Positions 1 through 54,623 of a stretch of 64,000 nucleotides of DNA are shown piece after piece. The number at the start of each line of letters is the position of its first letter. The stretch's first letter is position 1. Origin of the DNA: Ophelia neglecta. Lineage: Eukaryota. Location of the stretch: NCBI GenBank assembly GCA_965285935.1, contig OZ260662.1, positions 88,164,001 through 88,228,000 of the forward strand. The letters are read 5' to 3'. The notes beneath the pieces are model-generated. The model made no database searches and was not told where the DNA came from. It saw nothing but the letters and a program-made list of their open reading frames with translations. Made by a program: the position numbers and the translations under genes.

Positions 1-989
1 CCACGCTTGTCTGAAGGTGAAGATTACAACCACACCTGTACCGACAAGTTCAGCGTCTTCTACCACTGCAACGCCTGGATCAACTGCTGCAACCACCACC
101 AGTACAACCACACCAGTCACGGAAAGTACAACAGCAACAACAGAGAGTACCACTACCTCTCCGACGACAACCACTACGACAGCTACAAGGACCACCACTA
201 GCACCCAGGGAACAACGACGCTGACAGAGAGAATAACAACTACTCGTACGGAGGTCACTACCACTACCAATGTGGCCACAACCACCACAGTTGCTGTCAC
301 TTCCACCACGCCAGGTGAGAAGTGTCCAGAGGACATGGAAAACCCTACCCTCATCACTCCTGAAATGATCACCATACAGCCAGAGCAATACTCACCTCAA
401 AAGGAGAAGCTAAGAGTAAAACCTGAGCCTAGTGAGCCTTTTACCGCCCCAGTGGCTGAGAAGCCATCCATCATTATCAACTTCCCCGAACCCGACAGCA
501 GCAAACCAAGTGGCACGCTTGTAGAGAAACTCGTATTCCCCAAGCCTAGCAATGTGAAGACAGTTAAAATTTACAGACGCCGGCCTTCCACGCCTACCGA
601 TAACAAACCATCAGATGAGCAATGGGAGCCAGTAGGAGATACGCCTACTTATGATGCTACCAAACCCATTGTCTTTAAGCGTCCAATCAAGGTGATTAAG
701 TTGAAGATTGTGCCTGATGAGCCAACGGACAAGAGTGGAGAGTTCAAGATCAAGCTGCAGGTACATGCCTGTATTAAGGTTAAGATGACCACGACCACTA
801 CATCTACAACTGTGAGACCCACCACTTCACAGGCAGCTACAACAGCCGAAACTTCTCCGACAGAAATGTCATCTACATCAAGAGCTACCACTGCCCGAAC
901 AACCCCTGGAGGCATAACCACTACAGCTGGTACCACGGCAGAACAGACTCAGCCGACCACTACGGTAGCGGCATCAACAACCACACAGG
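1..989 (+). CDS. Mucin exon (array 1, partial): PTS + one F5/8C-like module
   Basis: Open frame with CPEDMENP...LQVHAC module; phase-1 donor at 990. Confidence 0.88.
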
Positions 990-3900
990 GTAATGGCAGC
1001 AATCTCTTTTTTAGTTTCAGCTACAATGTTTTTCTGTGAAATCGATTTAACACAATATGGTATTTCTATGTCATAATTATCAGGATACGCGTCTCAGTTT
1101 AAAATGTTCTGTACCTAACACTCGTCATTTTATCTTACTTTTTACATGACAATTGAATCAGACCGTATTTGAATGACGCTTTCCATATAAAAGACCAATA
1201 TAGCCATGTTTGAAGTTTAATTTCCATGCCTCCTGCATTTTGTTCATGTAAAGTTTTAATGATTTAATTCTTAGTATAAATGCGTTTATATTCTCTTCTG
1301 ATTGTCTCTGAATACAGCTACAACTACAACCACTCCACCAGTTACTACTACTACTGCTGCTGGTTCTACCACATACACATCAGTGATCTCAAGCACGGTT
1401 CAGCCAACCGTGGAGCCATCCACAACAAGCAAAACCACCACCACCACGGAGGGCACCACTACTGTGTCTGGAGTCAACACTTTGACACCAACTACAAGGA
1501 CCTTCCCGACTACAACTGCCACAACTCCTGTGGCTACTACCACGGTTGTTATAACCTCAACTACACCGGGAGAGAAATGTCCAGAGAACATGGACAATCC
1601 TACATTTATCACTCCCAATATGATCACTATCAGGCCTCCACAATTCGACCAAGATAAGCCTAAATTGAGGCCATCGTCCGAGCAACCACTACGCATTCCG
1701 AAGACAGAGAAGCCATCCATCGAAATAGACTTTACCGAGCCCAATCCACAACAGCCAGTCGAAACACCCGTGGATAAGATCGTCTTCCCAACACCTAGCA
1801 ATGTGAAGAGAGTTAAGATTTTTAAGAAAAAACCAACTAGCGGCACCCCGACTGATGAAGAATGGGAAGAGGTGAAGCCAAAGAATGGTGAGCCAACATT
1901 TGATGGCACACATCCAATCGTCTTTGACCCACCAATTGACGTCACTGTACTGAGGATCGTTCCAGAAGAGCCAAATGACAACGACGAGGATTTCATCATC
2001 AAACTGAAGATCCACGCTTGTCTGAAGGTGAAGATTACAACCACACCTGTACCGACAAGTTCAGCGTCTTCTACCACTGCAACGCCTGGATCAACTGCTG
2101 CAACCACCACCAGTACAACCACACCAGTCACGGAAAGTACAACAGCAACAACAGAGAGTACCACTACCTCTCCGACGACAACCACTACGACAGCTACAAG
2201 GACCACCACCAGCACACAGGGAACAACGACGCTGACAGAGAGAATAACAACTACTCCTACGGAGGTCACTACCACTACCAATGTGGCCACAACCACCACA
2301 GTTGCTGTCACTTCCACCACGCCAGGTGAGAAGTGTCCAGAGGACATGGAAAACCCTACCCTCATCACTCCTGAAATGATCACCATACAGCCAGAGCAAT
2401 ACTCACCTCAAAAGGAGAAGCTAAGAGTAAAACCTGAGCCTAGTGAGCCTTTTACTGCCCCAGTGGCTGAGAAGCCATCCATCATTATCAACTTCCCCGA
2501 ACCCGACAGCAGCAAACCAAGTGGCACGCTTGTAGAGAAACTCGTATTCCCCAAGCCTAGCAATGTGAAGACAGTTAAAATTTACAGACGCCGGCCTTCC
2601 ACGCCTACCGATAACAAACCATCAGATGAGCAATGGGAGCCAGTAGGAGATACGCCTACTTATGATGCTACCAAACCCATTGTCTTTAAGCGTCCAATCA
2701 AGGTGATTAAGTTGAAGATTGTGCCTGATGAGCCAACGGACAAGAGTGGAGAGTTCAAGATCAAGCTGCAGGTACATGCCTGTATTAAGGTTAAGCTGAC
2801 CACGACCACTACATCTACAACGGTGAGACCCACCACTTCACAGGCAACTACAACAGCCGAAACTTCTCCGACAGAAATGTCATCTACATCAAGAGCTACC
2901 ACTGCCCGAACAACCCCTGGAGGCATCACCACTACAGCTGGTACCACGGCAGAACAGACTCAGCCGACCACTACAGTAGCGGCATCAACAACCACACAGG
3001 GTAATGGCAGCGATCTCTTTTTTAGTTTCAGCTACAACGTTTTTCTGTGAAATCGATTTAACACAGTCCGGTGTTTCTATGTCATAATTATCAGGATACG
3101 CGTCTCAGTTTAAAATGTTCTGTACCTAACACTCGTCATTTATCTTACTTTTTACATAACAATTGAATCGGATCATATTTGAATGACGCTTTCCATATAA
3201 AAGACCAATATAGCCATGTTTGAAGTATAATTTCCATGCTTCCTGCATTTTGTTCATGTAAATTTTATTTGATATTCTTCTTGGTATGAATGCGTTTATA
3301 TTCTCTTCTGATTGTCTCTGAATACAGCTACAACTACAACCACTCCACCAGTTACTACTACTACTGCTGCTGGTTCTACCACATACACATCAGTGATCTC
3401 AAGCACGGTTCAGCCAACCGTGGAGCCATCCACAACAAGCAAAACCACCACCACCACGGAGGGCACCACTACTGTGTCTGGAGTCAACACTTTGACACCA
3501 ACTACAAGGACCTTCCCGACTACAACTGCCACAACTCCTGTGGCTACTACCACGGTTGTTATTACCTCAACTACACCGGGAGAGAAATGTCCAGAGAACA
3601 TGGACAATCCTACATTTATCACTCCCAATATGATCACTATCAGGCCTCCACAATTCGACCAAGATAAGCCTAAATTGAGGCCATCGTCCGAGCAACCACT
3701 ACGCATTCCGAAGACAGAGAAGCCATCCATCGAGATAGACTTTACCGAGCCCAATCCACAACAGCCAGTCGAAACACCCGTGGATAAGATCGTCTTCCCA
3801 ACACCTAGCAATGTGAAGAGAGTTAAGATTTTTAAGAAAATACCAACTAGCGGCACCCCGACTGATGAAGAATGGGAAGAGGTGAAGCCAAAGAATGGTG

Positions 3901-6900
3901 AGCCAACATTTGATGGCACAAAGCCACTCATCTTTGACCCACCAATTGACGTCACTGTACTGAGGATCGTTCCAGAAGAGCCAACCGACAACGACGAGGA
4001 TTTCATTATCAAACTGAAGATCCACGCTTGTCTGAAGGTGAAGATTACAACCACACCTGTAACAACAAGTTCAGCGTCTTCTACTGAGGCAACGCCTGGA
4101 TCAGCTGCTGCAACCACCACCAGTACAACCACACCAGTCACGGAAAGTTCAACAGGAACCACAGAGAGTACCACTACCTCTCCGACGACAACCACTACGA
4201 CAGCTACAAAGACCACCACTAGCACCCAGGGAACAACGACGCTGACAGAGAGAATAACAACTACTCCTATGGAGGTCACTACCACTACCAATGTCGCCAC
4301 AACCACCACAGTTGCTGTCACTTCCACCACGCCAGGTGAGAAGTGTCCAGAGGACATGGAAAACCCTACCCTCATCACTCCTGAAATGATCACCATACAG
4401 CCAGAGCAATACTCACCTCAAAAGGAGAAGCTAAGAGTAAAACCTGAGCCTAGTGAGCCTTTTACTGCCCCAGTGGCTGAGAAGCCATCCATCATTATCA
4501 ACTTCCCCGAACCCGACAGCAGCAAACCAAGTGGCACGCTTGTAGAGAAACTCGTATTCCCCAAGCCTAGCAATGTGAAGACAGTTAAAATTTACAGACG
4601 CCGGCCTTCCACGCCTACCGATAACAAACCATCAGATGAGCAATGGGAGCCAGTAGGAGATACGCCTACTTATGATGCTACCAAACCCATTGCCTTTAAG
4701 CGTCCAATCAAGGTGATTAAGTTGAAGATTGTGCCTGATGAGCCAACGGACAAGAGTGGAGAGTTCAAGATCAAGCTGCAGGTACATGCCTGTATTAAGG
4801 TTAAGCTGACCACGACCACTACATCTACAACTGTGAGACCCACCACTTCACAGGCAACTACAACAGCCGAAACTTCTCCGACAGAAATGTCATCTACATC
4901 AAGAGCTACCTCTGCCCGAACAACCCCTGGAGGCATCACCAGTACAGCTGGTACCACGGCAGAACAGACTCAGCCGACCACAACAACACCAGTTGTAGCG
5001 GCAACTACAACCACACAGGGTAATGGCAGCGAATAACTGTTTATTTATTGCTAGCTATGCTTTTATTGCTGCAAAGCGTTTCCTTGATCCGAATTATTAG
5101 ATATTTTAACTGTTATTATCAGCAATAAAAATGGATAGTTTCTGCCATAAATTACGATAATCGTTCTCTGATGTTCAACTTTATTATTGCATTGTATTTT
5201 TCATTGATTTCGTTTGTTACAGCCATTTGCATTCCTATGAAGTCACATTTCTGTACCTAGTAGCAAGCTTGATTTAAAGAAATGAAGTTATTGACATTCT
5301 TTCAATATATGTGTTATTTGCAGAATCAACAACTAAAGCCAAGACACAAAAGACTACACCCGTCATCATAACAACAGAGGTTACAAAAACAGTTTCCCCA
5401 TCCCTGACTACAACTATCACTAAAACAACAACTGAGATCATAACAACTGTTGGTACTACAACTTCCTCTGGTGTTAACACTTCAACTCCGTTTGGAACTA
5501 CAACGCAAACCAGTGGAACTACGCCTAAAGTTTCATCAACAACGGCACCACTTGTACTTACTTCGTCCATACCTCCTACTACCTCAAATGCTCCAACTAC
5601 TACCACACGAAAGAGGTATGATGACGAAAAGAAAACTACCACGACTACCCACGCCTCTTCCGCAACTACAACTGTTGAGGTTGGAACAACCACCCAAGGT
5701 GCAACCACAACAGTCAGTGAGAAACCAACTGGACATCCATCCCCATCCGCCACCATATCTGGTTCTACAAGCACTTTAACCACAGCTGGTTCCTCAACTA
5801 TCGGACGTGAAACCACTGCAGTAGCATCAACCACTACTTCAGGTCCTGGTACCACTACTGCACAAACTACAATTGGCGCAGGCACAACAACAACTGAGGA
5901 GGAACTAGCTACAACTACCGGAACCTCAGCAACACCAACAACAACGCATGCTCCAACAGCTGGTAGAACAACGGTTACTGAATCCACTGCACCAGGTAGG
6001 TTTGCAACATAACGTACACAATGCCACTTTTGCCATATTTTTTCAGTGGATGAAGAGTGACAAATACGAGTCTCTCGATTTTTTACATATCTTACCTTTA
6101 ATTCAAGTTAAATGTGTCATTTAAAACTTTGTCAGTAAAATTATTTCGTTACCTTGTTTTTGCCTATTGAGATGGATATTGAACCTGTTGGTTGGCCAAT
6201 GGGATAGATAAGAACACTTACAATGTAAATAACAGGACTGAACTTTTGGAAGATAATAAGATTTTGTATATATATGTAGAATGCCCATAGACACTGGCAT
6301 CATTTTCCTAGAAAAAGTTTAGGAGAGTAATGTAGTTCACTGTCAACGGGGTATAAAGCAGTTTCTTCTTCACATTGGGAGGGCCATTTCCATCCAAAAA
6401 TCACCGGCTTCTCGCATTGAGAATACGACATAGTCTTCTGTAGGCTATTCTAGGCAATATTATTTTCGTCATATGTTGGCCTCTAACCTTCTGCTTGTGC
6501 GATTGACTCGTGTCATGAGAAACAGTAGAATACTTCTCATTGGAAGTGATAACTTTATTTTTATTTATTCCATTCATAATACTTGGTACACGTATTTATA
6601 ATTTTGGAACTGGAGATCGATGTAATCAGGGATGGCGGTCGACGGTTGTTGGTGGACGAATAACTCTATAATATTTTGAATTAGTAATATTGATTTTTCA
6701 GTCGGTTGATTGGATGAGACAAGTGTATGTACCGAAATGCGCTGCTGGTTATGTGTAACCTCCCATACTTTTTCAATTGGTCATCCATTTGGATTCGTAC
6801 CGGCATTAAGTATGCCACTTCCATGCACTTACTCCAACGACAAGCTTATGTCTGGCCGTGTATGACCGATGCATTGAATAGAGAAATGACCCTCTGACAC

Positions 6901-9900
6901 AATTATATTAAAATGTGATTCGGACACACACACAAAAATATTTGTTCATAACGTGTTAAAGCCAAAGTGGTATGCTTTGGTTTCAACTGACAACAGCACT
7001 TTTCTTTTGGCGCCGCAGTTTCATTTTTCAGAAGAAAAAAACCATGAGTAGATACCGCACAGGCAGAATAAATTCGATTCATAAACGGAATGGTATAATC
7101 AGTTTTGTTGGCTGTCCTCAGTAATTTTCTAACATGAAAAGACAATGCTTTTTATGTTTTATAAACGTTCCCATCTGGCACAAAAGTTAACCTTTCAACA
7201 CTTTTAAGAAATAACCATTTTCCTCAGGCTATTGTGATGAAAGGCCGGTGCCTATGGTAAGCACATCCATACTGATATTGGCGACAGGCTCTACACCAAA
7301 AGAAAACATTTACGCTGCAAGCAAGGAATGGACATCTAAGACCAAGAAGGAAAATCATGAACCCAATATTGCTGTGGGAATCAAAGATAGGTCGGTTTTA
7401 TATGTATGGTAAAGTCCTAAACAGTCATTTGTTTTGTTAACGTTAACATTGTCATTTGTCTCGATTTACTGTCTCTTTTTTAGGGGGGTTAAAGAAGTCA
7501 CCTTAGTTGAAATGGAAGTGGAGGGTCAATTAAAAGAAGTTCAGATCCTTACCGATACAGGATACACCAAGGTATTCTTTTAATGACTTGAATAGCATTT
7601 TTAGTATTTACTTATCCAAGAGTGCCTTCAGTAACATATTCCTCATTGACACAATCTGATGTGAAATATTTGTTTGTAATTAGAGTTAAAACACCTGGAA
7701 AAAAGGCATTATACATTCTTACTAAATGTTTTGTCAACACAGAGGGTGTCTGTTTCTAATGCGGATGCCTGGACTTTTGTGAAAATCCCTGTGATTATAG
7801 CCTCAAAGCCTGCCACATTCTTCATAAGGCCAGTGTTTTCTGATGATGCCCTTGATGATTCTTCAGTTGGTGTGAAAAATCTTAAAATCCATGCCTGCTA
7901 TGAAACAAGTGAGCCTTTTTTTTATTGTATTTATTCTAGGAAAGACTTAGATTAATTGAATTGAAGGAATATCCAAAACTCAAATACATTCACTAAACGT
8001 AATTTCAATTTCGCATACCTCTGTTTGCAAAATTTTGTAGCCACCACCACTTCAAATCCAACAAAACCAACTACGCTTACAGGTGAGTCATTGAAATAAA
8101 CATAATCGGTGAATCTATTTTGTGAGAAAAGCGACATTGGAATCAGATAACACGCAGAAAAACACGTTGATGAATAATATAACGGGTACACGGATTACTA
8201 CGCTATCAACGTACAGACCGATTGAACTCACATTTCTCTGTGAACACATTCTACAATCTATTTTCCGTGTGGTTTCACATGGGTCATTGATGTGGAATTG
8301 ATATTCTCTTTTGTTTAGAAAAAAATAGGTTGACAATCTAAAAATTATATATCTCATTATTAAAGCAGTAAATTATAAAAACATATAATGCTGTAATCAT
8401 TTTTTTGTGACAATGTATAGTTGTAACACAAAACACGGACACTTGTGCAAAATTGCAACTTATTTTTTTGTTTAATGTTAAGGCTCAACAACATCCACAC
8501 CGCCTACATCAGTAACCCAGGAACCAACAACAAATACTGAAAGAAACACACCGTCTACAGTAACCACAACTATGAAATCTACTACTACAAGCGGTGTCAC
8601 AAGTCCTATAACTTTCTCATCAACAACAGCTGCTCCTCCGTCTTCTCCCGTACCAACTACCACCACAACGACCAAAGAAGCAACAACCAGTTCCAGTTAT
8701 ATAACAACGACAGGCACACCTGCTGTCACCACAACTACCGTCCTGGCAACAACGGTGACCGTAGCATCAACTACACCTGGCGAAAAATGCCCAGAGGACA
8801 TGGACAACCCTACTTTCATCACTCCCGATATGATAACTGTCAGGCCTCCACAATTCGACAAAGATAAGCCCAAACTTAGACCATCTACAGCGGAACCGCT
8901 TCGGATTCCAAAGACGGAGAAGCCGTCCATCGAGATAGACTTTACCGAGCCCAATCCACAACAACCAGTCGAAACACCGGTGGAAAAGATTATCTTGCCC
9001 ACACCTAGCAATGTGAAGACAGTTAAGATTTTCAAGAAGACAGTAAAACCAACTAGCGGCACCCCGACTGATGAAGAATGGGAAGAAGTGAAGCCAAAGA
9101 ATGGTGAGCCAACATTTGATGGCACAAAACCAATCGTCTTTGATCCACCAATTGACGTTACTGTACTGCGGATCGTTCCAGAAGAGCCAACTGACAACGA
9201 CGAGGATTTCATTATCAAACTGAAGATCCACGCTTGTCTGAAACTGAAGATAACTACCACCACGGTGCTCACTGAACCTACAACAAACACAGAAGGCACA
9301 ACAACACCTTCTATCACGGAACCAGAAACAACTACTACAGGTGCCACCACCACAACTACAACAATGGCCGAAACCACAACCACATCTGCAATTCCTGTGA
9401 CAACGACATCCAGCACTATGGGAACCACAACCATGGTTGAAGTTGCAAGCCCGTCTGGAACAACAACAGCCGCTGTAGGTACAACAACAGAGGAAATGAC
9501 AACCACAACGGTCTCTGGTGTAAACACCCTGACACCAACCATTAGAACCTTCCCAACCACTACAACCGAGGCAACCGTTACCACTACTGTGGGCACTACC
9601 TCCACAGAAGCTGGCACTACTACGTCTGCGGGCGAAGCTACAACCACAGAGAGTACAACACCTGAAACTACAACTGGCAGCATGACTACAACGTCCCTAG
9701 CATCAACAAGTACAGTGGGAAGTACCACACTGCCTAGCACAACTACCACAGTTACCATCACATCAACCATGCCTGGTGAAAAATGCCCCGAAGACATGGA
9801 CAATCCAGTTCTTATCAATCCTAACATGATTACCATCAATCCAAGTAAATACAATGACCAACCAAGTAAAGATAAATTGAGACCATCCTCCGTTAAGCCA

Positions 9901-39900: not shown

Positions 39901-42900
39901 GGCGCATTTGCACATCGGATATTTGGATGCAGAAATATAGTTTTGTTCGTGTTTATTTTCTATGTGTTGAAATGATATACCAGCTTCTTTCCTATGAAAG
40001 TAACTACAACTGCTTCCACCACTGTTGGAACAACCACTACACCAATGCCTACCACGACTACACCACTGCCAACCACAACCACACCACAGTGTATGTATGA
40101 AATAGAGTTCATATAGAAATAGAAGTGCGATCGGCTAATACTTGTATTTGTTAGAGCATTTCAATTTTTAAAATGGTGAAATGTACTTTTGTTATCCAGA
40201 CTGTGATGCCCCACAAGTGGCTACCAAATGTGTCTGCCATAAGACCTGTGACCACCTGGCCTCTCCTAGTGATGTAAGAAGCTGCCCTGCCCCAGGCTCA
40301 GCCGAATGCCACAAAGGATGCCACTGTCCCGAGGGCACAGTTATGAACAATGGCAAATGTATCAAGGAAACAGGTTGTCCATGCTACTACCAACCACATG
40401 GCAAATATTACAAGGCAAGGACTTGGCTACTTCTACGTCATTAGTTCGAGTGTAGAAAGCATCCTCGTCTGAAGTCTTCAATAGCAATGTCGTTAAATTA
40501 AAAAGTATGATAATGTTAGTGGTACACAATATCATGAAATAAAATTATTTCATAGGTTGGTGAGAAGATTGAGATTGGACAGCAGTGTGTACATGCTATT
40601 TGTACTCCTGCAAATGGTATTGTCAAAATCACTGACATGAATTGTCACCACCACAGTGAGTATACATGCTCAAATATGGTTTACACGGTAGACCCACTTA
40701 GATTTGCAATAACTGAAACATTAACAACCATGTTATTTCGTGTTCATATTGTAATAATGCTTAGGCCTTTGCCAGCTATTTTATATTTACACTATATGAT
40801 TCACTCAGATGTGTGCACCAATGGCCGTGTCTTTAAGAGCTGTCCGTGTGAGAAGACCTGTGAGCAGCCAGACCATGTCTGCGATATGTCCAGCTGCAAG
40901 CCAGGCTGTGCATGTCCACAGGGCACCTTCTGGAATGAAGACCAATGTGTCGAGAAATGGCAGTGTGACTGTCGCCATGGAAATAAGACATTTGACAATG
41001 GAGACAGATGGGATGTAGGCCAGTGTACAAAGTGTCGGTAAGACGTAAAAAAATGCTTATTTACAGCATTAATACTAAACTGTTTCCTTTTTCCTCTACT
41101 CCTATTTATTTATTTCCTAGTGCATGCGTCAGACCGCATGCTATAGTGCATTTATGCTAGAGCTTCATTTTTAAAACTTGGCATGTTTAATACAGGAAAG
41201 GCTACATTCAATAATGGAGGAACGCTCACTCAACCTGTAAGGAATAAAGTATTCAACCGATTAAATGCCCTTTATCGCCGAAAGAATTTTTTTGAATTAA
41301 AAACGTCATCATCAGCCACCATGTACCGATACATAGATACGTCACGTGCTATGGATTTGAACGATAAAAACTCGTCTGCACTAACAAACTAAAACTAAAA
41401 ATCTGCCATGTATGACAGGCAGGAAATAATTAATACCTCAATTCCGGGATCACAGTCAATTGACACCGCCCGCCCGCCCCCCCCCCCCCCCCCACCCACT
41501 CCTACCCGCATATACAACGCCAAGGGTGCGTTTGCATTTTTCATGGCTCGGTAGCAATTTTTTAAATTGTGGACATGATATAAGTTGCACGGGATTATTA
41601 TCTATTTATATTATTTATTTTTCAATTGCTTTTACCTTAGCTGTGTGAATGGTACCGAAATATGCAGTGAGTATTGTGGCCTAACGAATGAGATGTGCTC
41701 AGCTCAAGGCAAGACTCTTCTCAACAAAGACTTGGAGGACAATATCTGCTGTCGCTGTGTATCGGATGAGCCTGTTTGTGAAGACGAGGACGGAAAAGAA
41801 CGTCCTGTGAGTGATTGTGATTATAATCACCCAATTCATTACTTTATGTTCCTAAATTTATATTTGTATACCAAAAACTTAACATTTGATATAGACCGGT
41901 AAATACTCCTTTACAGATCGGCTCTACGTGGAACAAAGGTCTATGTGAATCTTTGGAGTGCGTCATGACAAAGTCAGGCAATGCTGAGATAATCAAGACA
42001 AAGACAGCGTGTGCCCCATGCCGTGAGGATGAGATGCCAGTCTACTACTCGACTAAGTGCTGTCCGGAATGTAGACGCACGAACATTACTACTACTACTG
42101 TGGTGACCATTGCGCCTACTAATGGTACACAGACTACCACTCCAATGACTACCGTGCCAATAATAAGCACAACCACACCCATCATCTTTACCACTAGTAA
42201 GTTAGGCGTTTAAAAAAAAAACAATGTATACACTAACTCTTAAAAGATAACTTATAATTTGTTTAATGAAGCAAAGTCTATTGATCTAATAATACTTTGT
42301 CTCAGAACTTCAAGCAAGCATGATATTTGAAGAAAAACCACCGGCTCCCAAAAATGATAGATAACTCTTGAAATGGAGAAACTTATATATGACCATACTC
42401 GGTATTGAGGCACTAAGAAAGACCAATTATTTCTTTGTTTCCAATCAGCATCAATGTTGACAACAACTACTTCTGACATTGTAACTGGCAGTCCAACTCC
42501 ACCAACAGAAGTGACCACAGCTTTGCCAACAACAACTTCCGCCCCGGTAACAACCACGGCTGGTACCACTGCCACATCTAATCAACCTACGACAACAATG
42601 ACAACAACTCCACTGCCGAGTTCCACTACAACATCAGGCACAATGGAAACGACAACAGGTAATTCAGTTGTCCAAACCACGGAGAGGAGTAACCTGTTAA
42701 AGGGACTTGTATAATCTAATTGGAACATGTAAAACGTTTCCTAAAACACATGGCACAAATTAACTCAAAACCATCAGCTGAAGAGCAATGGCCAGCGTAA
42801 ATGAAAACTCTTTATCAAACCACCCCTAAACGATCACTATCATACCTCTAAAATGACGCCGATTTTATTGTAAGGGCCGTGAAATATCGCCATAATATAT

Positions 42901-45900
42901 TGCAATAAAACGTTTGCGTGATACAAACATTTCCGAATTCAATTGATGAAAAAGTTTCTAATTAGCGAAAACGTTTTTGCGAATTCAAGAGTTTGCACTT
43001 CCACTGTCAATATCATTTGGCCAAATATGTAGGATGTTTTGTAAAATTGCCATATTTAACCTCACTTGTTAAAAAACGGGATTTTGATCAAGTAACAACT
43101 GAGAAGTTAACAAAAACGTTTGAGTGGACGTAATGTTTTTGTATGTCAGTGCCGTCCTATGTAGTATACCTGTGCTCAAAGCAAAGGAGAACCAAAAAAA
43201 TACATTTAATAAAAATACAAAATTGAGAGAAATATAAATTCAATCACTTGAACTTAATAGCTTCAACAACTACAACTGCACCAGTGGATAAATGTCCAGA
43301 GAGCATGGACAATCCCACACAAATCACTCCCGATATGATCACTATCAGACCTCCGCAATTCGACAAAGATAAACCCAAATTAAGGCCATCGTCGGACGAA
43401 CCACTTCGCATTCCCAAGACAGAGAAGCCATCCATCGAGATTGACTTCACAAAGCCTAACCCAATTCAACCCACTCCTGTCGAGAAACTTATCATGCCAA
43501 CTCCAAGCAATATCAAGACCGTCAAGATCTTCAAGAAGACACCAACAACAAGTACTCCTTCAGACAATGATTGGGAGGAAATCAAGCCAAGCGAAGGAAA
43601 TCCAACATTCGACGCCACCAAACCAATCGTTTTCAGGCCTCCCATAGATGTAACGATCTTAAAGATTGTACCTGAAGAGCCAACTTCTGATGATAAGGAT
43701 TACAAACTTAAATTGGCTATCCATGCATGCATTAAGATTAAAACGACAACTACAACTTCAGCAGCAACTACAACTGCCTCAACAGGTAGAACAGATATAT
43801 TCAAAATTCAATTATTTTGCACATCATACATTTGTTTTCCCTCTAAGCTCGCACTGTGTTTCTCACTCATTTACTTTCGCCCTAGCTCCATCCACAACCA
43901 TGCCACCAACCACAACCACTGAAGTATCGACAACGACCCTAAGACAGTCTACAACTACAACACCACCTACAAATCCAATTACAGTCCCCACAAATCCAGT
44001 ATCTGGAACTACAACCGAAACTGGAACAACCACCACAGAAACTGAACAGACAACAACAGAACCTGGATCAACCACCAGAGAAACAACCTTGTCAACTGCA
44101 TCGACAACGCCTACCACCAGTAAGGGAACGACCATAGTTTATATCTTTTCAAATGAATGTAAAATCTTATATGTGATTCTCGCACGTGATTGAAAGGCGA
44201 AAACTTATTTGATGTTTTAAACAAATTCGAAACCATGAAATATTGTTGTGAAAATTATCTCAAATTCATAAAGCAATTACTAAAGTCATAATATGTTATA
44301 CATACACAGTGCCATCAAAGACCACAACTACTACTGAAATTATGACCGACAGCCCCACTCCTCCAGAAGAAGCCACTACGTCATCATCTACCAATAGCCC
44401 TGTTCCTACAACAGTTGCCCCAATTGCTACAACCACATCACAGACTATGACGTCTTCTGTACCAGCATCTACCACTACCCCATCAGTACCAGTCACAACT
44501 ACAACAGGTAAGAATTTTAGCCAATTAAAAGTAAAACTACTTTGTTTGGTCGAAAGAGTAATTTTGTTTGTTTCCTGGCTAAACAGGGCTTATGCTTACA
44601 AGCAGGGGCCACTGCACAAGTGTTATCTAAGCGAATGAGAGACAATACGCGTGCCATTGAAATGGACTGCTGGTATTTGACCATAACATTTAATAAAGCT
44701 GTATGCCAAAACATAAAAGGCATGAATCGTGCAACCGGAATGGGTGTTTGATGGAATCCTATGTGAGAATACCAATGGTAGCTTGTTTGTCACAGTTTGT
44801 GTAGACTGCTAGCATATTTAAAGGTGGGACTTAACACTGCCTTTTCTAAGAGATTGATTCGTGGTAATAAACGTACTGGACCGCGTCGCTGGAGTTGGAG
44901 GTAAAACGGGAGTGGATACCCGGCAGACACAACAAAGTTCCTTATCAGGAATAGTCAATAAAATCGGTTCGAAAGAGTCAGGAATCACCAGCCACTTGCC
45001 CACAAACATCAACACCAAGCTCCCCAACATTGGATAAACTCAAAATAATTGATATCATATGCAAGGGTAGTCAGCAGTATTCAGGATGCCAGTAAGGTCT
45101 GCCTTCTTGGTCATATTGCTTTCAGCCGACCGTTACAATGATTAATGATTTACCATTGTTTGCCGGGTATCCACTCCATTGTTCCTCTACAACGGTACAA
45201 ACTTTAATAAAGAGAGGCTGAAATATAATAAAAATAGAAATAATACCTAGTTTTATTTATTGCTAATATACTACTATAGGCGTTATTTTAACTTCCTCAA
45301 GGGGGTTCATTTCATTCAGTGCTTTGTAGCAGATAAAGCAGCTAATGATTCTGGAAGTTAAGTCCTCTCTCCGAATTACGCTAATAATCAGGAACAATTT
45401 TGTGGCAGTCAAATTTCCACCAAAGATTTCATTAGTTACTAATAAAAAAAACGTTGTTATAGCCATAAATACGTAAATAAATGGTGTTTGAAAATATTGT
45501 CTCTTGGGGTGAAAATATCAAAATCACTTAAATTCCCCTGTATGAACAATGTGACTATGGGTCGGTAGCTGCACATGTACATTAGCCGCAATTATACGGC
45601 AGCTAGAGGACTTTCTGTTTGTCCCATAAGCACGAATTTATTCCAAAGGGTTCTCCATTTCTAGACCATTGATGATTACTTCTAGTTGCATCAACTACCA
45701 TGCCACCAACAACCACACCAGAAGTTTCCACAACAAGCTTAGGACAATCTACAACTACCACGCCACCAACACGAATTACCACAGTGACAGCAACAACTGA
45801 GGCTGGAACAACAACCATTACCTCTGGAACAACGACATCCGAAATAGGAACAACAACCGCACCAACTACAGAGTCAACAACATGTACGTAGAAAGTTAAA

Positions 45901-48613
45901 CTAATTAAACGTAATGGTCCATATGCAAAATAATGTTATGGCATGATTGACACATTATCATTAAATTGTAGTTAGTCAGTAAGCTTATTTTAATTGTAAC
46001 CATGTTTTCTCGTCGTATCTACAAGCATAATCTTTACAATTGTGCATTGTTCTCAGTTAATGTTTTAATCATTGTTTCAAACTTTAGCTAAAGGTGTACA
46101 ATATGAAGCAGCTCTTTGTGTTATTTCAGTCTCACACCTCGTCAATACTGTCACTGTGCCATCTACAACTAAACGAAATACAGGTATTAACCCTACTGGC
46201 ATAATGTATTATTTGCCCGGTATTCTAATGATATATATCGGTAAAGAAAAACATCATGCATATAATACACTACAACTGGTATAAGAATTATTTGTTTCCA
46301 CTCTATAGTGACACCCCCTTGGCCTACTAGTTCATCATCCACTGAGGGCACAACAACAATAGCTACAACCACAACATCTGGTGTCAATACTCTTACACCG
46401 ACCACAAGGACCTTCCCTACCACAACCCTACCAACCACTACTCAGGGAACTACCACCATGGAAACCACTACCGTGTCTGGGGTCAATACAATGACTCCAA
46501 CCACAAGGACCTTCCCTACAACAACCCTACCAACCACCACACAGGGAACTACCACCATGGAAACCACTACTGTGTCTGGGGTCAATACAATGACTCCGAC
46601 CACAAGGACTTTCCCGCCAGGTACATAATAAGTAATAAGATATTCAAGCCATGCACTGAAATATAAATTATTATGAATCAGTTCAATATGCATGGAAATA
46701 CTCTATTGCAATCCTTACAGGCGATAATATGTCTGAAAGAGGGTATAATCACTATGTCCAGAAACAAAGGAATTTATTACCATTCTGTAACTACTGTTTC
46801 GTTTTTTCCCAGTTTCTACCGACTCTACAACAGCTGCGCTGACCACAACGCATCCAGCCGTCACCACAACTGCAGCTGCGTCTGATACGACTACAAACAA
46901 ACAAACTAGTACAACTGGTGTTAGCTCTACAACTACAGGCTTAGCAACAAGTACGGTAGGGGAAACTGGCAGCCCATCGCCAATCACTTCCGAAACTACG
47001 GCCGGACAGACCACACTTGTATCAACTACAACTCAACCTCCTACTACAAGTACGGCCGAACAGTCGACAACAACAACACCTCCAAACACACCCGCTCCAA
47101 CAACCGGTACCTATAATGATCACATACATACTTTGGTCTCTAGATTCCAAAAGCATTATTTGAATTGATGAATATGATTCTTTTTATGTATGACATGTTT
47201 TGTCCCCCTATAGGTACCACTGGAGCCACAACAATGACAACTACTAGATCAACTACTACGACTACTTCTGGGTGTAAGCTAAACGATTTCATCTACTCAA
47301 ATGTTTTAAATACAACTTACCTAAATGTGCGTCCATCAATAACATACTGTGCATCTAACTGATCATTATATTTTCAAATATTAAGATATAATACGCATTT
47401 GACATGGATACCATCATAACAAGCCATCTAAGCTTAAATATATAGAAAAAATATATGTTAAAAGATGTATTCAACGAAAATCTGTCAATGTATTTAGGCG
47501 AATACGAGGGCAAGATGTACACCATTGGCGAAGTATGGCGACCCAAGACCAAGGAGGGCAGTGCCACCTGTATGAAGTGCACCTGTAGGAGTCCTGCCCA
47601 GGGCGGTGTCACTTGCGAGGATCTCTCCAAACAATGTGATCTGACGTGTAATGTAAGTCCTTATCAGAACAAGAAGCCCTACGTTGATTAATGGCTAGTT
47701 TCTTTAATAGATGGTGTGTGATATTTTAGACATTTTAGTCACTTTTCAAGACAACGCTATTATTGACGATTTTTCCCATTTTAGGGTGAATTAATTTATG
47801 TTGAAGACAAATGTTGCCCGATCTGCAGTAAGTGATTTTTTTGTGACATACTTACAGTTAGTAATTCAATTGACTAAAAAAAATGTTATGTGCACTTCTC
47901 TTTCGTAGCGGAGATATGCCAATATAGCTGAGCTTTTTTATAACTTTTTTAATAGAGCTTAGTTCTACTGTGAGGAGTTTTCGTGTTACTAATTGTATAT
48001 GGTTTTATAACCAGGGCCAAAGGAAGAAAAATGCCTACACAACTCATACGAGAGCACAATTAACATTGATGGCTGCGTTTCCGACAAGCCGGTGTTCCGG
48101 TCCCTGTGCTCCGGCTCGTGTGGCTCCAACGCTACAACAACATTCACCGCTCCCTATATGAAGACCTCGTGCAAATGTTGTAAACCAACAAGTATGGCAA
48201 GAGAATCTGTCTCGCTCCGATGTGGTATGTAACAACAATACATAACCATTTGATTATTAGAATGTTAACTGTATGTAGTTTTTCCTGCATAAGCCTAAAT
48301 GCTTAGTAGTCTGATAATCGCATAGTATGCTTTGGTGATAATGAAAATTGAATTCTTTATCCGGCAATTATCTTAGGAATACACTGTGACAGTGATTCGT
48401 GGTTGAATTAATCTGACAACCTCATATCATGTTACTCTATATAGAAAACGACTAATTCAAACCTTTTTCTCTTCAGCCAATGGAACAATGACCGAACACC
48501 ATTATGTGAGGATAACGTCTTGTGGCTGTGAAGCATGTCAGTACAACCCGTTTGCGCCTAGTTCCTCAATGCAGCAGCCTATCACTACTCAACTTGGAAA
48601 TACCAACAACTAG
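1..48613 (+). CDS. Giant gel-forming mucin/VWF-superfamily-like glycoprotein (PTS + F5/8C-like repeats + TIL + VWC + CTCK), multi-exon, 5' end outside window
   Basis: Hand-traced exons with compatible phases: <1-989, 1318-3000, 3328-5019, 5324-5995, 7228-7390, 7484-7571, 7743-7908, 8041-8082, 8483-10303, twelve 1881-nt exons starting 10429, 12435, 14440, 16445, 18450, 20455, 22460, 24466, 26471, 28476, 30481, 32487, then 34932-35435, 35630-35875, 36345-36604, 36995-37145, 37355-37599, 37758-38016, 38250-38435, 38553-38660, 38802-38967, 39167-39302, 39484-39631, 40001-40090, 40200-40414, 40556-40655, 40809-41037, 41641-41806, 41917-42196, 42449-42658, 43261-43785, 43886-44119, 44310-44507, 45686-45883, 46130-46183, 46309-46620, 46813-47106, 47214-47273, 47498-47652, 47785-47827, 48015-48224, 48477-48613 (TAG). 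Summed length from base 2 is 36006 nt, a multiple of 3 (~12,000 codons). Confidence 0.9.
1318..3000 (+). CDS. Mucin exon (array 1): PTS + two F5/8C-like modules, phase 1-1
   Basis: Pyrimidine tract + TACAG acceptor at 1317, GTAATG donor at 3001, 1683 nt. Confidence 0.9.
3328..5019 (+). CDS. Mucin exon (array 1, last unit): PTS + two F5/8C-like modules, phase 1-1
   Basis: Acceptor 3327, donor 5020, 1692 nt. Confidence 0.9.
5324..5995 (+). CDS. Mucin exon: unique Thr-rich PTS tract
   Basis: TTTGCAG acceptor at 5323, CAG|GTAGG donor at 5996, 672 nt, phase 1-1. Confidence 0.85.
7228..7908 (+). CDS. Three mucin exons (7228-7390, 7484-7571, 7743-7908) encoding a divergent F5/8C-like domain
   Basis: Spliced product YCDERP...EWTSK...EVTLVEMEVEG...FFIRP...LKIHACYE; phases 1-2-0-1 join without stops. 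Confidence 0.75.
8041..8082 (+). CDS. Mucin 42-nt PTS mini-exon
   Basis: TTTTGTAG acceptor, CAG|GTGAGT donor, phase 1-1, TTTTSNPTKPTTLT. Confidence 0.7.
8483..10303 (+). CDS. Mucin array-2 exon 1 (variant 5' end), two F5/8C-like modules
   Basis: TTAAG acceptor 8482, donor 10304, phase 1-1. Confidence 0.85.
10429..12309 (+). CDS. Mucin array-2 exon 2
   Basis: 1881 nt, AG/GT bounded, phase 1-1. Confidence 0.9.
12435..14315 (+). CDS. Mucin array-2 exon 3
   Basis: 1881 nt, AG/GT bounded, phase 1-1. Confidence 0.9.
14440..16320 (+). CDS. Mucin array-2 exon 4
   Basis: 1881 nt, AG/GT bounded, phase 1-1. Confidence 0.9.
16445..18325 (+). CDS. Mucin array-2 exon 5
   Basis: 1881 nt, AG/GT bounded, phase 1-1. 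Confidence 0.9.
18450..20330 (+). CDS. Mucin array-2 exon 6
   Basis: 1881 nt, AG/GT bounded, phase 1-1. Confidence 0.9.
20455..22335 (+). CDS. Mucin array-2 exon 7
   Basis: 1881 nt, AG/GT bounded, phase 1-1. Confidence 0.9.
22460..24340 (+). CDS. Mucin array-2 exon 8
   Basis: 1881 nt, AG/GT bounded, phase 1-1. Confidence 0.9.
24466..26346 (+). CDS. Mucin array-2 exon 9
   Basis: 1881 nt, AG/GT bounded, phase 1-1. Confidence 0.9.
26471..28351 (+). CDS. Mucin array-2 exon 10
   Basis: 1881 nt, AG/GT bounded, phase 1-1. Confidence 0.9.
28476..30356 (+). CDS. Mucin array-2 exon 11
   Basis: 1881 nt, AG/GT bounded, phase 1-1. Confidence 0.9.
30481..32361 (+). CDS. Mucin array-2 exon 12
   Basis: 1881 nt, AG/GT bounded, phase 1-1. 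Confidence 0.9.
32487..34367 (+). CDS. Mucin array-2 exon 13
   Basis: 1881 nt, AG/GT bounded, phase 1-1. Confidence 0.9.
34493..34552 (+). other. Relic 3' end of a 14th array-2 unit / possible 60-nt cryptic exon
   Basis: Copy of VHACITVTVTTT directly after a truncated array intron; AAG acceptor and CAG|GTATTA donor, phase 1-1. Confidence 0.6.
34932..35435 (+). CDS. Mucin unique PTS exon
   Basis: T-tract + TACAG acceptor, GTGAGT donor, 504 nt, phase 1-1. Confidence 0.85.
35630..38660 (+). CDS. Seven mucin exons: TIL-like and VWC-like Cys-rich modules alternating with short PTS tracts
   Basis: Exons 35630-35875, 36345-36604, 36995-37145, 37355-37599, 37758-38016, 38250-38435, 38553-38660; CxCxxGC...CxC and GExC...CxxCxC patterns; phases compatible. 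Confidence 0.8.
38802..39631 (+). CDS. Three mucin exons (38802-38967, 39167-39302, 39484-39631): canonical-looking F5/8 type C (discoidin) domain
   Basis: CFDPL...GWKAKSTDKKPWFIIIF...VTGFKIQ...LEFSNDGTSF...AQFVKF...VQLQGC matches F5/8C hallmarks (WxA, PW, VTG.xxQ, SxDG, ELxGC). Confidence 0.85.
40001..42658 (+). CDS. Mucin exons with two TIL domains, VWC-like modules and PTS
   Basis: CVCHKTCD...CHKGCHCPEG...CI...CPC and CPCEKTCEQ...CKPGCACPQG...CV...CDC are TIL patterns; CCRC and CCPEC are VWC-type ends. Confidence 0.85.
43261..43785 (+). CDS. Mucin exon with a solitary diverged copy of the intronless F5/8C-like module
   Basis: CPESMDNP...LAIHAC, 525 nt, phase 1-1. Confidence 0.88.
43886..47273 (+). 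CDS. Run of seven symmetric (phase 1-1) PTS exons
   Basis: 43886-44119, 44310-44507, 45686-45883, 46130-46183, 46309-46620, 46813-47106, 47214-47273; all AG/GT bounded, lengths multiples of 3, Thr-rich. Confidence 0.75.
46377..46616 (+). repeat. 99-bp (33-aa) coding tandem repeat, about 2.4 copies
   Basis: SGVNT(L/M)TPTTRTFPTTTLPTTTQGTTTMETTTV starting at 46377, 46476, 46575. Confidence 0.9.
47498..48613 (+). CDS. Terminal mucin exons: VWC domain + C-terminal cystine knot (CTCK) + stop
   Basis: CEYEGKMYTIGEVW...CMKCTC...CCPIC (VWC); CLHN...GC...CSGSC...CKCCKP...LRCANG...SCGCEAC (11 Cys, CxGxC/CxC knot); TAG at 48611-48613. Confidence 0.9.
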
Positions 48614-53760: not shown

Positions 53761-54623
53761 CGATCGTGGATTCAATCGAAACAGCCTCACTACACCGGAT
53801 GAGGACTGTAAATGCCTGCATGTACAACGTTCTCCATCAGTATTTTTAATGACCTCACAGCAGAAGCTACTCGGTAACTACTTTGATATAGGCCTATGGG
53901 AGTAATTTCGAGCTTGACATTAATTTGCTGAAATGTGACATTTATGAACTCAATGCTGGTTTTTGTTGGCTTAGTTTATGCAGCACAAAAGCCTATTCCT
54001 ATTACCTCATTGAAATAATTAATAAATACTTGTGCGCGGGCAACATGGATATATAAGTTGATGACATTCATAAGAGCAAATGCACTAGTGTTTCAGTAGA
54101 ATTGAATCATCCACTTGTACGCTTAAACATTGCAGACACAGTGAAATACATCATCGACCTATTATTTCAAATAAGAGGCGCTGTTTTCCATTGAACATAA
54201 GGTTGGCAAATATTTTATTTTTTGTGTTGCAAACTTCAAGTCTGTACTGATGAAAAAAGATATGGAGACTACTAATTCTAAACGATTTTAAGCATGATAT
54301 TGGTTATCAACCAAGTCAGTGCATTACTTGTAATTACAAGTTTGAATTTCTCAACTAATTTGTTAAACACAATGTATTAGTATAGTTTAAACCTAATCTA
54401 GTGTAACATTTCTGATTAAGCAGCAAAATGAACACTGAGCGTAAGCGTGGTTTATGATATAGCACGGTTTATTGGGGTAGGCCTAGTCGGAATGATTAAA
54501 ACTCGGCTAGCGCTATGAGACACATTGAAATCATTTGGAGTACCAGCAAAAACAGCCCTATATTAAACAGCTACGCAGAAAGTTTTCATAATGTTACCCA
54601 TTTCCTTTTCTGTAGAATATACT

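What the first reader, a model, noticed from the sequence alone, without database searches (positions are those of the whole stretch)
1..48613. Giant (>12,000 aa) polymeric mucin-like protein built as beads-on-a-string: PTS linkers with 32+ discoidin-like modules and a C-terminal cystine knot
Seen: one splice-compatible frame of ~12,000 codons in this window alone, with no N-terminus yet; 32 complete CPExMxNP...LKxHAC modules spaced by ~100-200-aa Thr-rich tracts; TIL/VWC modules; 11-Cys CTCK. Established: CTCK mediates tail-to-tail disulfide dimerisation in VWF and MUC2/MUC5; vertebrate gel mucins interrupt PTS with CysD domains; F5/8C domains occur in hemolectin, SCO-spondin and the sea-star adhesive protein Sfp1, but in small numbers. 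Inference: this is an unusual invertebrate mucus/glue/tube-matrix polymer in which a lectin-fold module takes the CysD position as a regularly spaced non-covalent cross-linker. This is my best candidate for the undescribed system.
Basis: partly seen in the sequence, partly recalled or inferred. Interest (0 to 1): 0.85.

Follow-up and report, generated by a model that had tools for sequence, protein, structure and literature searches.

The report
Giant mucin with discoidin-fold beads
This invertebrate (probably annelid) chromosome carries what looks like one 112-kb gene for a roughly 21,000-residue secreted, mucin-type polymer whose sugar-coated stretches are interrupted about 55 times by a fast-evolving version of the discoidin (factor V/VIII C) domain; that layout is not described in the papers I could search, but no RNA data exist to prove the transcript.

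Summary
The window has exactly 32 intact 146-150-aa modules (CPExMxNP...HAC) between Thr-rich tracts. It also has about 11,900 stop-free, phase-compatible codons, a TIL, VWC-like pieces and an 11-Cys knot ending at 48613.

The modules fold as discoidin (F5/8C) domains: AlphaFold pLDDT 84.5 and VIA Z 13.3 to factor VIII, neuropilin and CASPR2. Single modules miss Pfam's cut-off; a tandem relative reaches 41 bits.

The missing N-terminus lies 64 kb upstream on the same strand. It comprises a candidate signal peptide, EGFs, three VWD(-C8-TIL) units, an LDLa, TILs and a VWC. Array 1 continues upstream, giving 55 intact modules in two arrays of 14 and 13 near-identical two-module exons.

One unidentified other organism has the same exons in the same order (61-70% identity), but with a module array at a different site.

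My reading: a gel-forming mucin/hemolectin-type polymer in which a derived discoidin domain sits where CysD sits in vertebrate mucins. This is a new variant of a known kind.

Not shown: the single transcript (no RNA runs exist) and any cross-linking role (the dimer test gave no verdict).

The scan noted the discoidin likeness and the PTS motif before, on this same locus.

The parts
1..989 (+). 3' part of an array-1 exon (PTS, then module at 323-772, then PTS); the exon begins upstream of the window
   Evidence: donor at 990, same 1683-nt unit as the next exons
1318..3000 (+). array-1 exon, 1683 nt = 561 codons: PTS, module (1578-2021), PTS, module (2334-2783), PTS; phase 1-1
3328..5019 (+). 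last array-1 exon, 1692 nt, two modules (3588-4031, 4344-4793)
5324..5994 (+). PTS-only exon between the two arrays (model; acceptor TTATTTGCAG, donor GTAGGT, phase 1-1)
8561..10303 (+). first, 5'-shortened array-2 exon (5' boundary is a model), modules at 8788-9237 and 9784-10233
10429..34367 (+). twelve array-2 exons of 1881 nt (627 codons, two modules each) separated by 124/125-nt introns; 99.0-99.9% identical to each other; exon starts at 10429, 12435, 14440, 16445, 18450, 20455, 22460, 24466, 26471, 28476, 30481 and 32487
   Evidence: unitig depth about 10-20 times that of the unique flank
34932..35435 (+). PTS exon after array 2 (model)
35630..38660 (+). series of small Cys-rich exons, each followed by a PTS stretch (about 35630-35875, 36345-36604, 36995-37145, 37375-37599, 37758-38016, 38250-38435, 38553-38660); no Pfam family; conserved at 68-70% identity and in the same order in another organism (L020)
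38802..39631 (+). one canonical F5/8 type C domain split over three exons (about 38802-38967, 39111-39302, 39484-39631); inner boundaries uncertain
   Evidence: two exons hit PF00754 collinearly (profile 39-84, E 0.012; 92-118, E 0.093)
40200..40436 (+). TIL domain exon
   Evidence: PF01826, E 5.1e-7, 30.2 bits, over the cut-off
40809..42196 (+). TIL-like and VWC-like Cys-rich exons (40809-41037, 41641-41806, 41917-42196), ending in a PTS tract
   Evidence: (VWC E 0.045 on the first piece only); otherwise by reading of the Cys pattern
42449..42688 (+). PTS exon (model)
43261..43785 (+). single-module exon (module 32 at 43293-43730, 79% identical to the array-2 first module)
43886..47273 (+). 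PTS exons (about 43886-44119, 44310-44507, 45686-45883, 46309-46620, 46813-47106, 47214-47273); 46309-46620 holds a 99-bp tandem repeat with three copies of the motif SGVNT(L/M)TPTTRTF
47498..47827 (+). VWC-like domain in two exons (47498-47652, 47785-47827), ending ...CCPIC; canonical GTAAGT donors
   Evidence: (fn1-type weak hit E 0.0024)
48015..48613 (+). C-terminal cystine knot in two exons (48015-48224, 48477-48613), 11 Cys, CSGSC and CKCCKP motifs, TAG stop at 48611-48613
   Evidence: the only CxCCxP in 138 kb; VWF CTCK 4nt5, E 0.0017; DAN E 0.0021

Best explanation
The finding is the 3' two-fifths of one gene, about C2:88100736-88212613 (112 kb, + strand), for a secreted protein of about 21,000 residues of the VWF/gel-forming-mucin/hemolectin kind.

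The inferred order is:
1. Candidate signal peptide, an EMI-like piece and about four EGFs.
2. Three VWD(-C8-TIL) units.
3. Two diverged split discoidin-like domains.
4. PTS, LDLa, TIL and VWC pieces.
5. Array 1: 14 exons, each PTS-module-PTS-module.
6. A PTS exon.
7. Array 2: 13 such exons.
8. Small Cys-rich units with PTS.
9. One canonical F5/8C, then TIL and VWC.
10. PTS with one more module, then VWC and CTCK.

Shown here: the domains, their order on the DNA, the discoidin fold of the module, purifying selection on it, the phase-compatible open chain, and conservation of the exon order in another organism.

Inferred from the homologous parts of VWF and MUC2/MUC5:
- The chains dimerise tail to tail through the CTCK and multimerise head to head through the third VWD assembly.
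- The PTS tracts are densely O-glycosylated and extended.

If so, the product is a disulfide-linked polymer gel in which folded, disulfide-closed discoidin beads sit every 100-180 residues. That is where vertebrate mucins carry CysD.

The beads most likely act as binding nodes, for glycans, for other matrix components or for a partner site on neighbouring chains, that set the gel's stickiness. That step is inference only.

The arrays grow and are homogenised by unequal crossing-over of 2-kb exon-plus-intron units.
For: Module count and arrays.

Fold of the module:
- AlphaFold model pLDDT 84.5, pTM 0.81.
- Foldseek top 40 hits are nearly all eukaryotic F5/8C domains, E from 6.6e-5.
- VIA-align Z 12.4-13.3 over 127-132 residues for the top 17, all discoidin domains, spanning both terminal Cys.
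- Language-model neighbours are all F5_F8_type_C clusters, score 0.95.

Sequence link to F5/8C: a 10-module ORF of a relative scores 41.4 bits, E 1.9e-10, against PF00754. P0005 gives 4.8e-4 and P0006 9.4e-4. An upstream copy gives E 0.006.

Selection: dN/dS is 0.04-0.25 between module paralogues, for example 0.13 at dS 0.35.

N-terminus on the same strand:
- VWD x3, C8 x2, TIL, EGF, LDLa and VWC.
- Exon 1 candidate with Kozak gccgcaATGG, a hydrophobic core, a GTAAGT donor, and an in-frame join to the next exon.

One knot only: a single CxCCxP motif in 138 kb. The CTCK matches VWF 4nt5.

Open chain.

Collinearity in another organism:
- L020 has a two-module exon followed by the same Cys-rich exons in the same order, at 68-70% identity.
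- L021 has the LDLa...VWC series at 61-67% identity.

Copy number: unitig depth over array 2 is about 10-20 times that of the unique flank (the tool warns that depth is not a copy number).

Literature: F5_F8 domains are typical of lophotrochozoan mucin-like VWD proteins (PMC4948705).
Against: No RNA run exists for this organism. The single transcript, the exon boundaries outside the arrays and expression itself are therefore models.

My chaining script can insert small filler exons to keep the frame. Several exons are doubtful: 34517-34552, 37218-37245, 41419-41550, 44606-44700, 44955-45069 and 46130-46219.

The unit at C2:88139432-88140849, between the N-terminal part and array 1, carries a TAG and frame shifts.

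Single modules do not reach Pfam's cut-off (13.7 bits against 28.2).

The EMI-like exon has no Pfam hit.

No fourth VWD unit was found downstream of the third.

Nothing tests glycosylation, polymerisation or binding.
Confidence: 0.7

Rival explanations
1. The locus holds two or more transcription units. For example, a VWD-rich gene upstream and a separate array-plus-CTCK gene, or the two arrays in different genes.
For: There is no RNA evidence. A decayed two-module unit with a stop and frame shifts lies at C2:88139432-88140849, just before array 1. A 2.5-kb AT-rich gap separates the arrays at 6012-8560. Plus-strand AATAAA sites occur at 5124, 7067 and 8095.
Against: The 112 kb hold only one candidate signal-peptide exon and only one cystine-knot motif. 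All junctions tested are phase compatible. The exon order is conserved in another organism. An array-only product would lack a signal peptide.
Confidence: 0.15
2. It is one gene, but the mature products are much shorter. The 27 symmetric (phase 1-1) array exons would behave as cassette exons, or part of the array would be an assembly artefact, so 55 beads is an upper bound.
For: Every array exon can be skipped without changing the frame. The units are 99.0-99.9% identical, introns included, which is hard to assemble.
Against: All 27 exons are intact, with canonical GTAAT...CAG introns. Collapsed short-read unitigs over array 2 are about 10-14 times (run X3) and 14-22 times (run X2) as deep as the unique flank, against 13 assembled units. 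That sample is probably the assembly's own, and depth is not a copy number.
Confidence: 0.25
3. The discoidin-fold modules bind nothing. They would be compact, disulfide-closed spacers that break up the PTS, for example to aid ER folding and granule packing or to limit proteolysis, and cross-linking would rest on the VWD and CTCK ends alone.
For: The modules are Pro/Lys/Glu-rich with few aromatic residues. They evolve faster (44-50% identity between organisms) than the Cys-rich exons (61-70%). The self-association test gave no signal, though it is not evidence either way.
Against: dN/dS of 0.04-0.25 shows constraint beyond mere foldability. Discoidin domains are generally binding domains for lipids, glycans or collagen; this is general knowledge of the family, not tested here. 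Two module types are maintained side by side in every exon.
Confidence: 0.3

Closest known systems
Vertebrate gel-forming mucins (MUC2, MUC5AC, MUC5B, MUC19)
   Same: Three N-terminal VWD assemblies with C8 and TIL, very long PTS tracts interrupted at intervals by a small folded disulfide-bonded domain, C-terminal VWC and an 11-Cys CTCK, giant size, and tandem-repeat evolution.
   Different: The interrupting domain is a derived discoidin (F5/8C) domain instead of CysD, and there are 55 of them rather than 2-9. No D4-type VWD was found. The N-terminus has extra EGFs and an EMI-like piece, plus LDLa. The central region consists of 27 separate 1.7-1.9-kb exons with their own introns instead of one giant exon.
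Hemolectin/hemocytin and the lophotrochozoan mucin-like proteins of Lang et al. 2016 (PMC4948705)
   Same: Three VWD-C8-TIL units are followed by F5/8C domains, with a CTCK end. That paper states that the F5_F8 domain is characteristic of lophotrochozoan mucin-like proteins and that small PTS and CysD domains occur near it. Here two split discoidin-like copies sit just after the third VWD unit.
   Different: Hemolectin has a 3+2 VWD layout, two F5/8C domains and little or no PTS. Here no further VWD unit was detected downstream, and the discoidin module is amplified to 55 copies alternating with PTS.
SCO-spondin
   Same: EMI-like start, three VWD units, LDLa, F5/8C, TIL/VWC and CTCK.
   Different: No thrombospondin type 1 repeats were found in 138 kb: no WSxW or CSxTCG motifs. 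SCO-spondin has no PTS arrays.
Sea-star footprint protein Sfp1 and molluscan adhesive mucus proteins (e.g. Patella vulgata P-vulgata_3, PMC7333891)
   Same: Large secreted adhesive or mucus proteins that combine VWD, C8, TIL, LDLa, EGF and, in Sfp1 (from my own knowledge), discoidin and lectin domains.
   Different: Those have a few copies of each domain, are a few thousand residues long and have no regular PTS-discoidin alternation. No sequence relationship to them was tested here.

Membership tests
Gel-forming mucin / VWF-type secreted polymer | Three N-terminal VWD assemblies with C8 and TIL | tested here: met
   VWD at C2:88106072-88107341, 88108357-88110131 and 88112106-88113038; C8 x2 (E 1e-14 and 1e-15); TIL x4. 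They lie 51-58 kb upstream of the window on the same strand. Linkage to the arrays is inferred.
Gel-forming mucin / VWF-type secreted polymer | Long Pro/Thr/Ser-rich (PTS) domains | tested here: met
   Thr-rich linkers of about 90-180 aa between modules in all 27 array exons, plus PTS-only exons.
Gel-forming mucin / VWF-type secreted polymer | C-terminal cystine knot (CTCK) with the Cys pattern of the dimerising VWF/mucin knots | tested here: met
   11 Cys, CSGSC and CKCCKP motifs, stop 44 codons after the last exon junction. Best solved relative is VWF CTCK 4nt5, E 0.0017, followed by sclerostin, norrin and gremlin.
Gel-forming mucin / VWF-type secreted polymer | Signal peptide and one continuous transcript from the VWD units to the CTCK | not testable with these tools
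   A candidate first exon, MASVSPLQCILLAVIVQG..., has a Kozak context and a GTAAGT donor. No RNA run exists.
Hemolectin/hemocytin (3+2 VWD) | F5/8C domains directly after the third VWD-C8-TIL unit | tested here: inconclusive
   Two collinear, exon-split matches to the module profile at C2:88117126-88118283 (best piece E 6.3e-5) and 88118528-88119168 (E 0.2-7). Pfam finds nothing in these pieces.
Hemolectin/hemocytin (3+2 VWD) | Two further VWD-C8-TIL units C-terminal to the F5/8C domains | tested here: not met
   The genome-wide PF00094 search shows no VWD match between C2:88113038 and the stop at 88212613. No VWD hit appeared in the C-terminal pieces scanned.
F5/8 type C (discoidin) domain, for the repeated module | Eight-stranded beta-sandwich of the discoidin type | tested here: met
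   Model pLDDT 84.5. VIA-align Z 13.3, rmsd 2.9 over 131 residues to factor VIII C1; the top 17 are all eukaryotic discoidin domains. Foldseek E 6.6e-5, probability 1.00.
F5/8 type C (discoidin) domain, for the repeated module | Cys at the first and last position of the domain (the disulfide that closes eukaryotic discoidin domains) | tested here: met
   C1 and C150 are the only Cys of the module. C150 is invariant and C1 is present wherever the N-terminus is complete. Structural alignments span residues 1-150. The bond itself is inferred.
F5/8 type C (discoidin) domain, for the repeated module | Match to Pfam PF00754 above the gathering score | tested here: inconclusive
   Single window modules score 13.7 and 12.1 bits (E 0.067 and 0.22) or nothing, against a cut-off of 28.2. 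A relative with ten tandem modules reaches 41.4 bits, E 1.9e-10; P0005 reaches 20.7 bits.
F5/8 type C (discoidin) domain, for the repeated module | Ligand binding through the loops at one end of the barrel | not testable with these tools
   No coordinates or binding assay were available. The homodimer prediction gave no verdict.
SCO-spondin | Many thrombospondin type 1 repeats | tested here: not met
   No W[ST]xW[ST] or C[ST]x[ST]CGxG motif in any + frame of C2:88090001-88228000.

The most novel reading that the evidence does not exclude
The polymer would be self-complementary. The discoidin-fold beads would bind the conserved linear motif TVSxVNT(L/M/Q)TPxT(R)xF, or its glycoform. That motif recurs in otherwise unrelated PTS tracts of this gene and of its relatives in another organism. 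Chains would then cross-link reversibly bead to motif, giving a tunable glue or tube matrix whose strength scales with the copy number of a 2-kb exon unit.
Probability: 0.1. Interest if true: 0.8.

Novelty: new variant of a known kind. Interest (0 to 1): 0.55.

Why it matters
Gel-forming mucins are understood almost wholly from vertebrates, where CysD domains punctuate the glycosylated regions and their role in gel cross-linking is still argued. Here evolution has put a different, well-studied binding fold in the same position and amplified it 55-fold. That offers a natural comparison for what such interrupting domains do.

It also gives an unusually clean example of concerted evolution of whole exon-plus-intron units. 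Twenty-seven exons, all phase 1-1, are about 99% identical within each array. The same gene in another organism expanded the module at a different site.

If the protein is the bulk component of an annelid's mucus, glue or tube, the module and the conserved PTS motif are candidates for biomaterial design.

Tried and rejected
- RNA support: the look-up of sequencing runs found no RNA run, only three DNA runs of one sample. Splicing could not be tested.
This is not evidence either way.
- Pfam on whole array exons and on most Cys-rich C-terminal and EMI-like exons: no family.
- First exon-chaining script (longest open path with strict donor sites): it skipped real exons and added false ones. I replaced it with a composition-scored version, which still holds doubtful filler exons.
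- Tree of modules across organisms, to ask whether the two module types predate the split: the deep forks are unresolved.
- Organism identity: assembly GCA_022702835.1 and WGS prefix JAKGBL are named in no paper held. Earlier notes of the scan say lophotrochozoan, probably annelid; I did not test that.
- Literature searches for a mucin with repeated discoidin domains found no precedent. Only open-access papers are covered.
- Fold search 'atlas' was not available.
- SCO-spondin membership: rejected, no TSRs.
- Hemolectin 3+2 membership: rejected, no downstream VWD.
All searches were exon by exon, by reference. The joined chain was only translated inside scripts to check frames and count Cys.

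Full report
**What is in the window**

A six-frame scan finds exactly 32 stop-free modules of 146-150 aa that start CP(E/D)xMxNP and end (H)AC, all on the + strand. Five lie at 323-4793, 26 at 8788-34297 and one at 43293-43730. They sit in long open frames whose remainder is Thr/Ser/Pro-rich. The window has no N runs.

The regular spacing comes from two tandem arrays of exon-plus-intron units.
- Array 2 has a 5'-shortened first exon ending at 10303. It is followed by twelve exons of exactly 1881 nt (627 codons, two modules each), separated by introns of 124 or 125 nt with GTAAT donors and CAG acceptors, all in phase 1.
- These twelve exons are 99.0-99.9% identical. They differ at 41 sites, 18 synonymous and 23 not, and none has a stop.
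- Array 1 exons are 1683 nt (the last is 1692), also with two modules and phase 1-1, and their introns are about 330 nt.

**Size of the open chain**

From the last array-1 donor (5020) a phase-compatible path runs through a PTS exon at 5324-5994 into array 2. From the last array-2 donor (34368) a stop-free chain reaches the TAG at 48611-48613.

The in-window coding length adds up to about 35.6 kb, or about 11,900 codons.

The C-terminal chain is a model. My script can add short filler exons to keep the frame. I regard 34517-34552, 37218-37245, 41419-41550, 44606-44700, 44955-45069 and 46130-46219 as doubtful.

The last four exons are confident. They have GTAAGT or GTATGT donors and YAG acceptors, and I read them directly.

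All searches were exon by exon, by reference.

**The C-terminal end**

- ORF 40181-40444 is a TIL domain (PF01826, E 5.1e-7, over the cut-off).
- Exons 47498-47652 and 47785-47827 read as a VWC-type module ending CCPIC (weak fn1-type hit).
- Exons 48015-48224 and 48477-48613 carry 11 Cys, including CSGSC and CKCCKP.
- The larger knot exon best matches the solved CTCK of von Willebrand factor (4nt5, E 0.0017), then sclerostin, norrin and gremlin.
- This is the only CxCCxP motif in the 138 kb I examined.
- A canonical F5/8C domain is split over three exons at about 38802-39631. Two of the exons hit PF00754 at collinear profile positions, E 0.012 and 0.093.

**What the repeated module is**

Pfam finds nothing in whole array exons. 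Single modules give at most 13.7 bits against PF00754, where the cut-off is 28.2.

An AlphaFold model built on 11 sequences is confident (pLDDT 84.5, pTM 0.81) and mostly beta.
- Foldseek against the PDB returns almost only eukaryotic discoidin domains: factor V and VIII C domains, neuropilin b1/b2, DDR2, CASPR2, retinoschisin and lactadherin, from E 6.6e-5.
- An independent all-against-all structural search gives Z 12.4-13.3, rmsd about 2.9 A over 127-132 of 150 residues. Its top 17 are all discoidin domains, and bacterial CBM32 modules follow at Z 9-11.
- The alignments run from the first to the last residue, that is from Cys to Cys. This matches the closing disulfide of eukaryotic discoidin domains.
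- Language-model neighbours are all F5_F8_type_C clusters.

At sequence level, relatives bridge the gap to Pfam.
- An ORF with ten tandem modules from another organism scores 41.4 bits, E 1.9e-10, against PF00754. Two single-module fragments give E 5e-4 and 9e-4.
- One upstream copy in this gene gives E 0.006.

It is under purifying selection. dN/dS between paralogous types is 0.04-0.25, for example 0.13 at dS 0.35 between the first modules of the two arrays.

It is also rare. A full HMMER pass over 1.84 billion representative proteins found 8 hits. All are unnamed fragments from at least five samples.

**The rest of the gene**

The window is C2:88164001-88228000 of a 762-Mb eukaryotic assembly. 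Array 1 continues 22.8 kb upstream. In all it has 14 intact exons, which gives 55 intact modules in the gene.

Before array 1 lies a decayed two-module unit with a TAG and frame shifts (C2:88139432-88140849). Further upstream are at least four more diverged, exon-split copies. Two of them (88117126-88119168) sit directly after the third VWD unit.

Further upstream on the same strand, Pfam confirms the following exon by exon:
- about four EGFs;
- VWD1 + C8;
- VWD2 + C8 + TIL;
- another TIL;
- VWD3 + TIL;
- an LDLa;
- two more TILs;
- a VWC.

A candidate first exon at 88100736-88100809 has a Kozak context (gccgcaATGG), a hydrophobic core (MASVSPLQCILLAVIVQG) and a GTAAGT donor. It joins in frame to an exon that reads like the start of an EMI domain. 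Pfam does not confirm the EMI.

No thrombospondin repeats occur. No VWD is found downstream of the third one.

The sum is a protein of roughly 21,000 residues from a gene of about 112 kb.

**Is it one gene?**

There is no RNA run for this organism, so this is inference.

In favour:
- one signal-peptide candidate and one knot in 112 kb;
- compatible phases at every junction tested;
- conserved order in another organism.

On the conserved order, contigs from one metagenome-type assembly (ERZ25069296) carry clear orthologues.
- L020 has a two-module exon followed by the same small Cys-rich exons as window 35.6-38.4 kb, in the same order and strand, at 68-70% identity.
- L021 has the LDLa-to-VWC series of the upstream part at 61-67% identity.
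- In L021, 13 modules with only 7-residue linkers and no PTS sit between the LDLa exon and the next exon. This genome has 600 bp and no module there.
- The module has therefore expanded independently at different sites of the same gene.

Against:
- the decayed unit before array 1;
- the 2.5-kb gap between the arrays;
- a few intronic AATAAA sites.

**Is the array real?**

Short-read unitigs of three runs of one sample, probably the assembly's own, collapse array 2. Over the array they are about 10-14 times (X3) and 14-22 times (X2) as deep as the adjoining unique sequence, against 13 assembled units.

The tool warns that contig depth is not a copy number. I take this only as showing that the array is not grossly inflated.

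**How it most likely works**

By homology with VWF and MUC2/MUC5, the CTCK should make tail-to-tail disulfide dimers and the third VWD assembly head-to-head links. This rests on established knowledge of those families, not on a test here. The PTS tracts should be densely O-glycosylated and stiff.

The result would be a polymer gel carrying a compact discoidin bead every 100-180 residues. That is the position CysD holds in vertebrate mucins.

Discoidin domains are typically binding domains. I therefore think the beads are binding nodes that tune adhesion or cross-linking. A passive spacer role cannot be excluded, and the homodimer prediction gave no verdict.

**Comparison with what is known**

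Lang et al. 2016 (PMC4948705) already state that F5_F8 domains are characteristic of lophotrochozoan mucin-like VWD proteins. They also state that hemolectin has a 3+2 VWD layout with F5/8C domains in the middle.

This gene fits that lineage at its N-terminus, but it lacks the two C-terminal VWD units. It has instead turned the discoidin domain into the repeating partner of the PTS, 55 times over. I found no description of that in the papers held.

I file it as a new variant of a known kind.

**A side observation**

The motif TVSxVNT(L/M/Q)TPxT(R)xF occurs once per array exon, three times in a 99-bp repeat at 46377-46615, and once in an upstream PTS tract. It also occurs in nine different PTS contexts in the other organism's contigs, and never on the opposite strand.

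A conserved linear motif inside otherwise free-drifting PTS sequence suggests a recognition, processing or docking site.

Noticed in passing
window 1470, 3480, 9517...33581 (one per array exon), 46380/46479/46578; C2:88124120; L020:1041, 9095; L021:2122, 2245; L022:80, 1367, 5412, 10664, 15886: A linear motif, TVSxVNT(L/M/Q)TPxT(R/K/I/V)x F, is conserved inside otherwise unrelated PTS tracts of this gene and of its relatives in another organism. It never occurs on the minus strand. It is not an N-glycosylation sequon. It might be a docking, cleavage or cross-link site.
   Followed up: partly
L021:4659-11131 compared with C2:88126931-88127556: In the orthologous gene of another organism, 13 discoidin-like modules joined by 7-residue linkers, without PTS, sit between the LDLa exon and the next exon. 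This genome has only 600 bp and no module there. The module array has expanded at different sites in different lineages.
   Followed up: partly
C2:88139432-88140849 (24.6-23.2 kb before the window): The unit just before array 1 is a decayed two-module exon with one TAG and at least two frame shifts. It may be a pseudo-exon, a skipped exon or an assembly error.
   Followed up: partly
C2:88117126-88119168 and 88136925-88138923: Four more diverged copies of the module are each split over two or three exons. Two lie directly after the third VWD unit, where hemolectin has its two F5/8C domains. They may be the ancestors of the array module.
   Followed up: partly
window 54591-56042 and 62182-63636 (+): Two single-exon paralogues (47% identical, 483 and 484 aa) encode secreted leucine-rich-repeat proteins. 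Each has a signal peptide and Cys-capped LRR flanks and no membrane anchor. They lie 6 and 13.6 kb downstream of the mucin stop.
   Followed up: partly
C2:86271418-86271606 (+), 1.9 Mb before the window: An isolated weak match (46% over module residues 2-70, E 1.2e-5) to the module. It may be a further gene or a fragment carrying it.
   Followed up: no
genome-wide, e.g. C1:132.7-133.6 Mb, C2:103.8-104.9 Mb, C5:16.6-19.1 Mb, C12:62.0-62.2 Mb: Canonical F5/8C exons are very numerous in this genome and lie in large tandem clusters (126 matches scored from 555 candidates).
   Followed up: no
window 41419-41550: A G/C-rich simple repeat inside an intron reads as poly-Pro on the + strand. My chaining script wrongly took it for an exon.
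   Followed up: no
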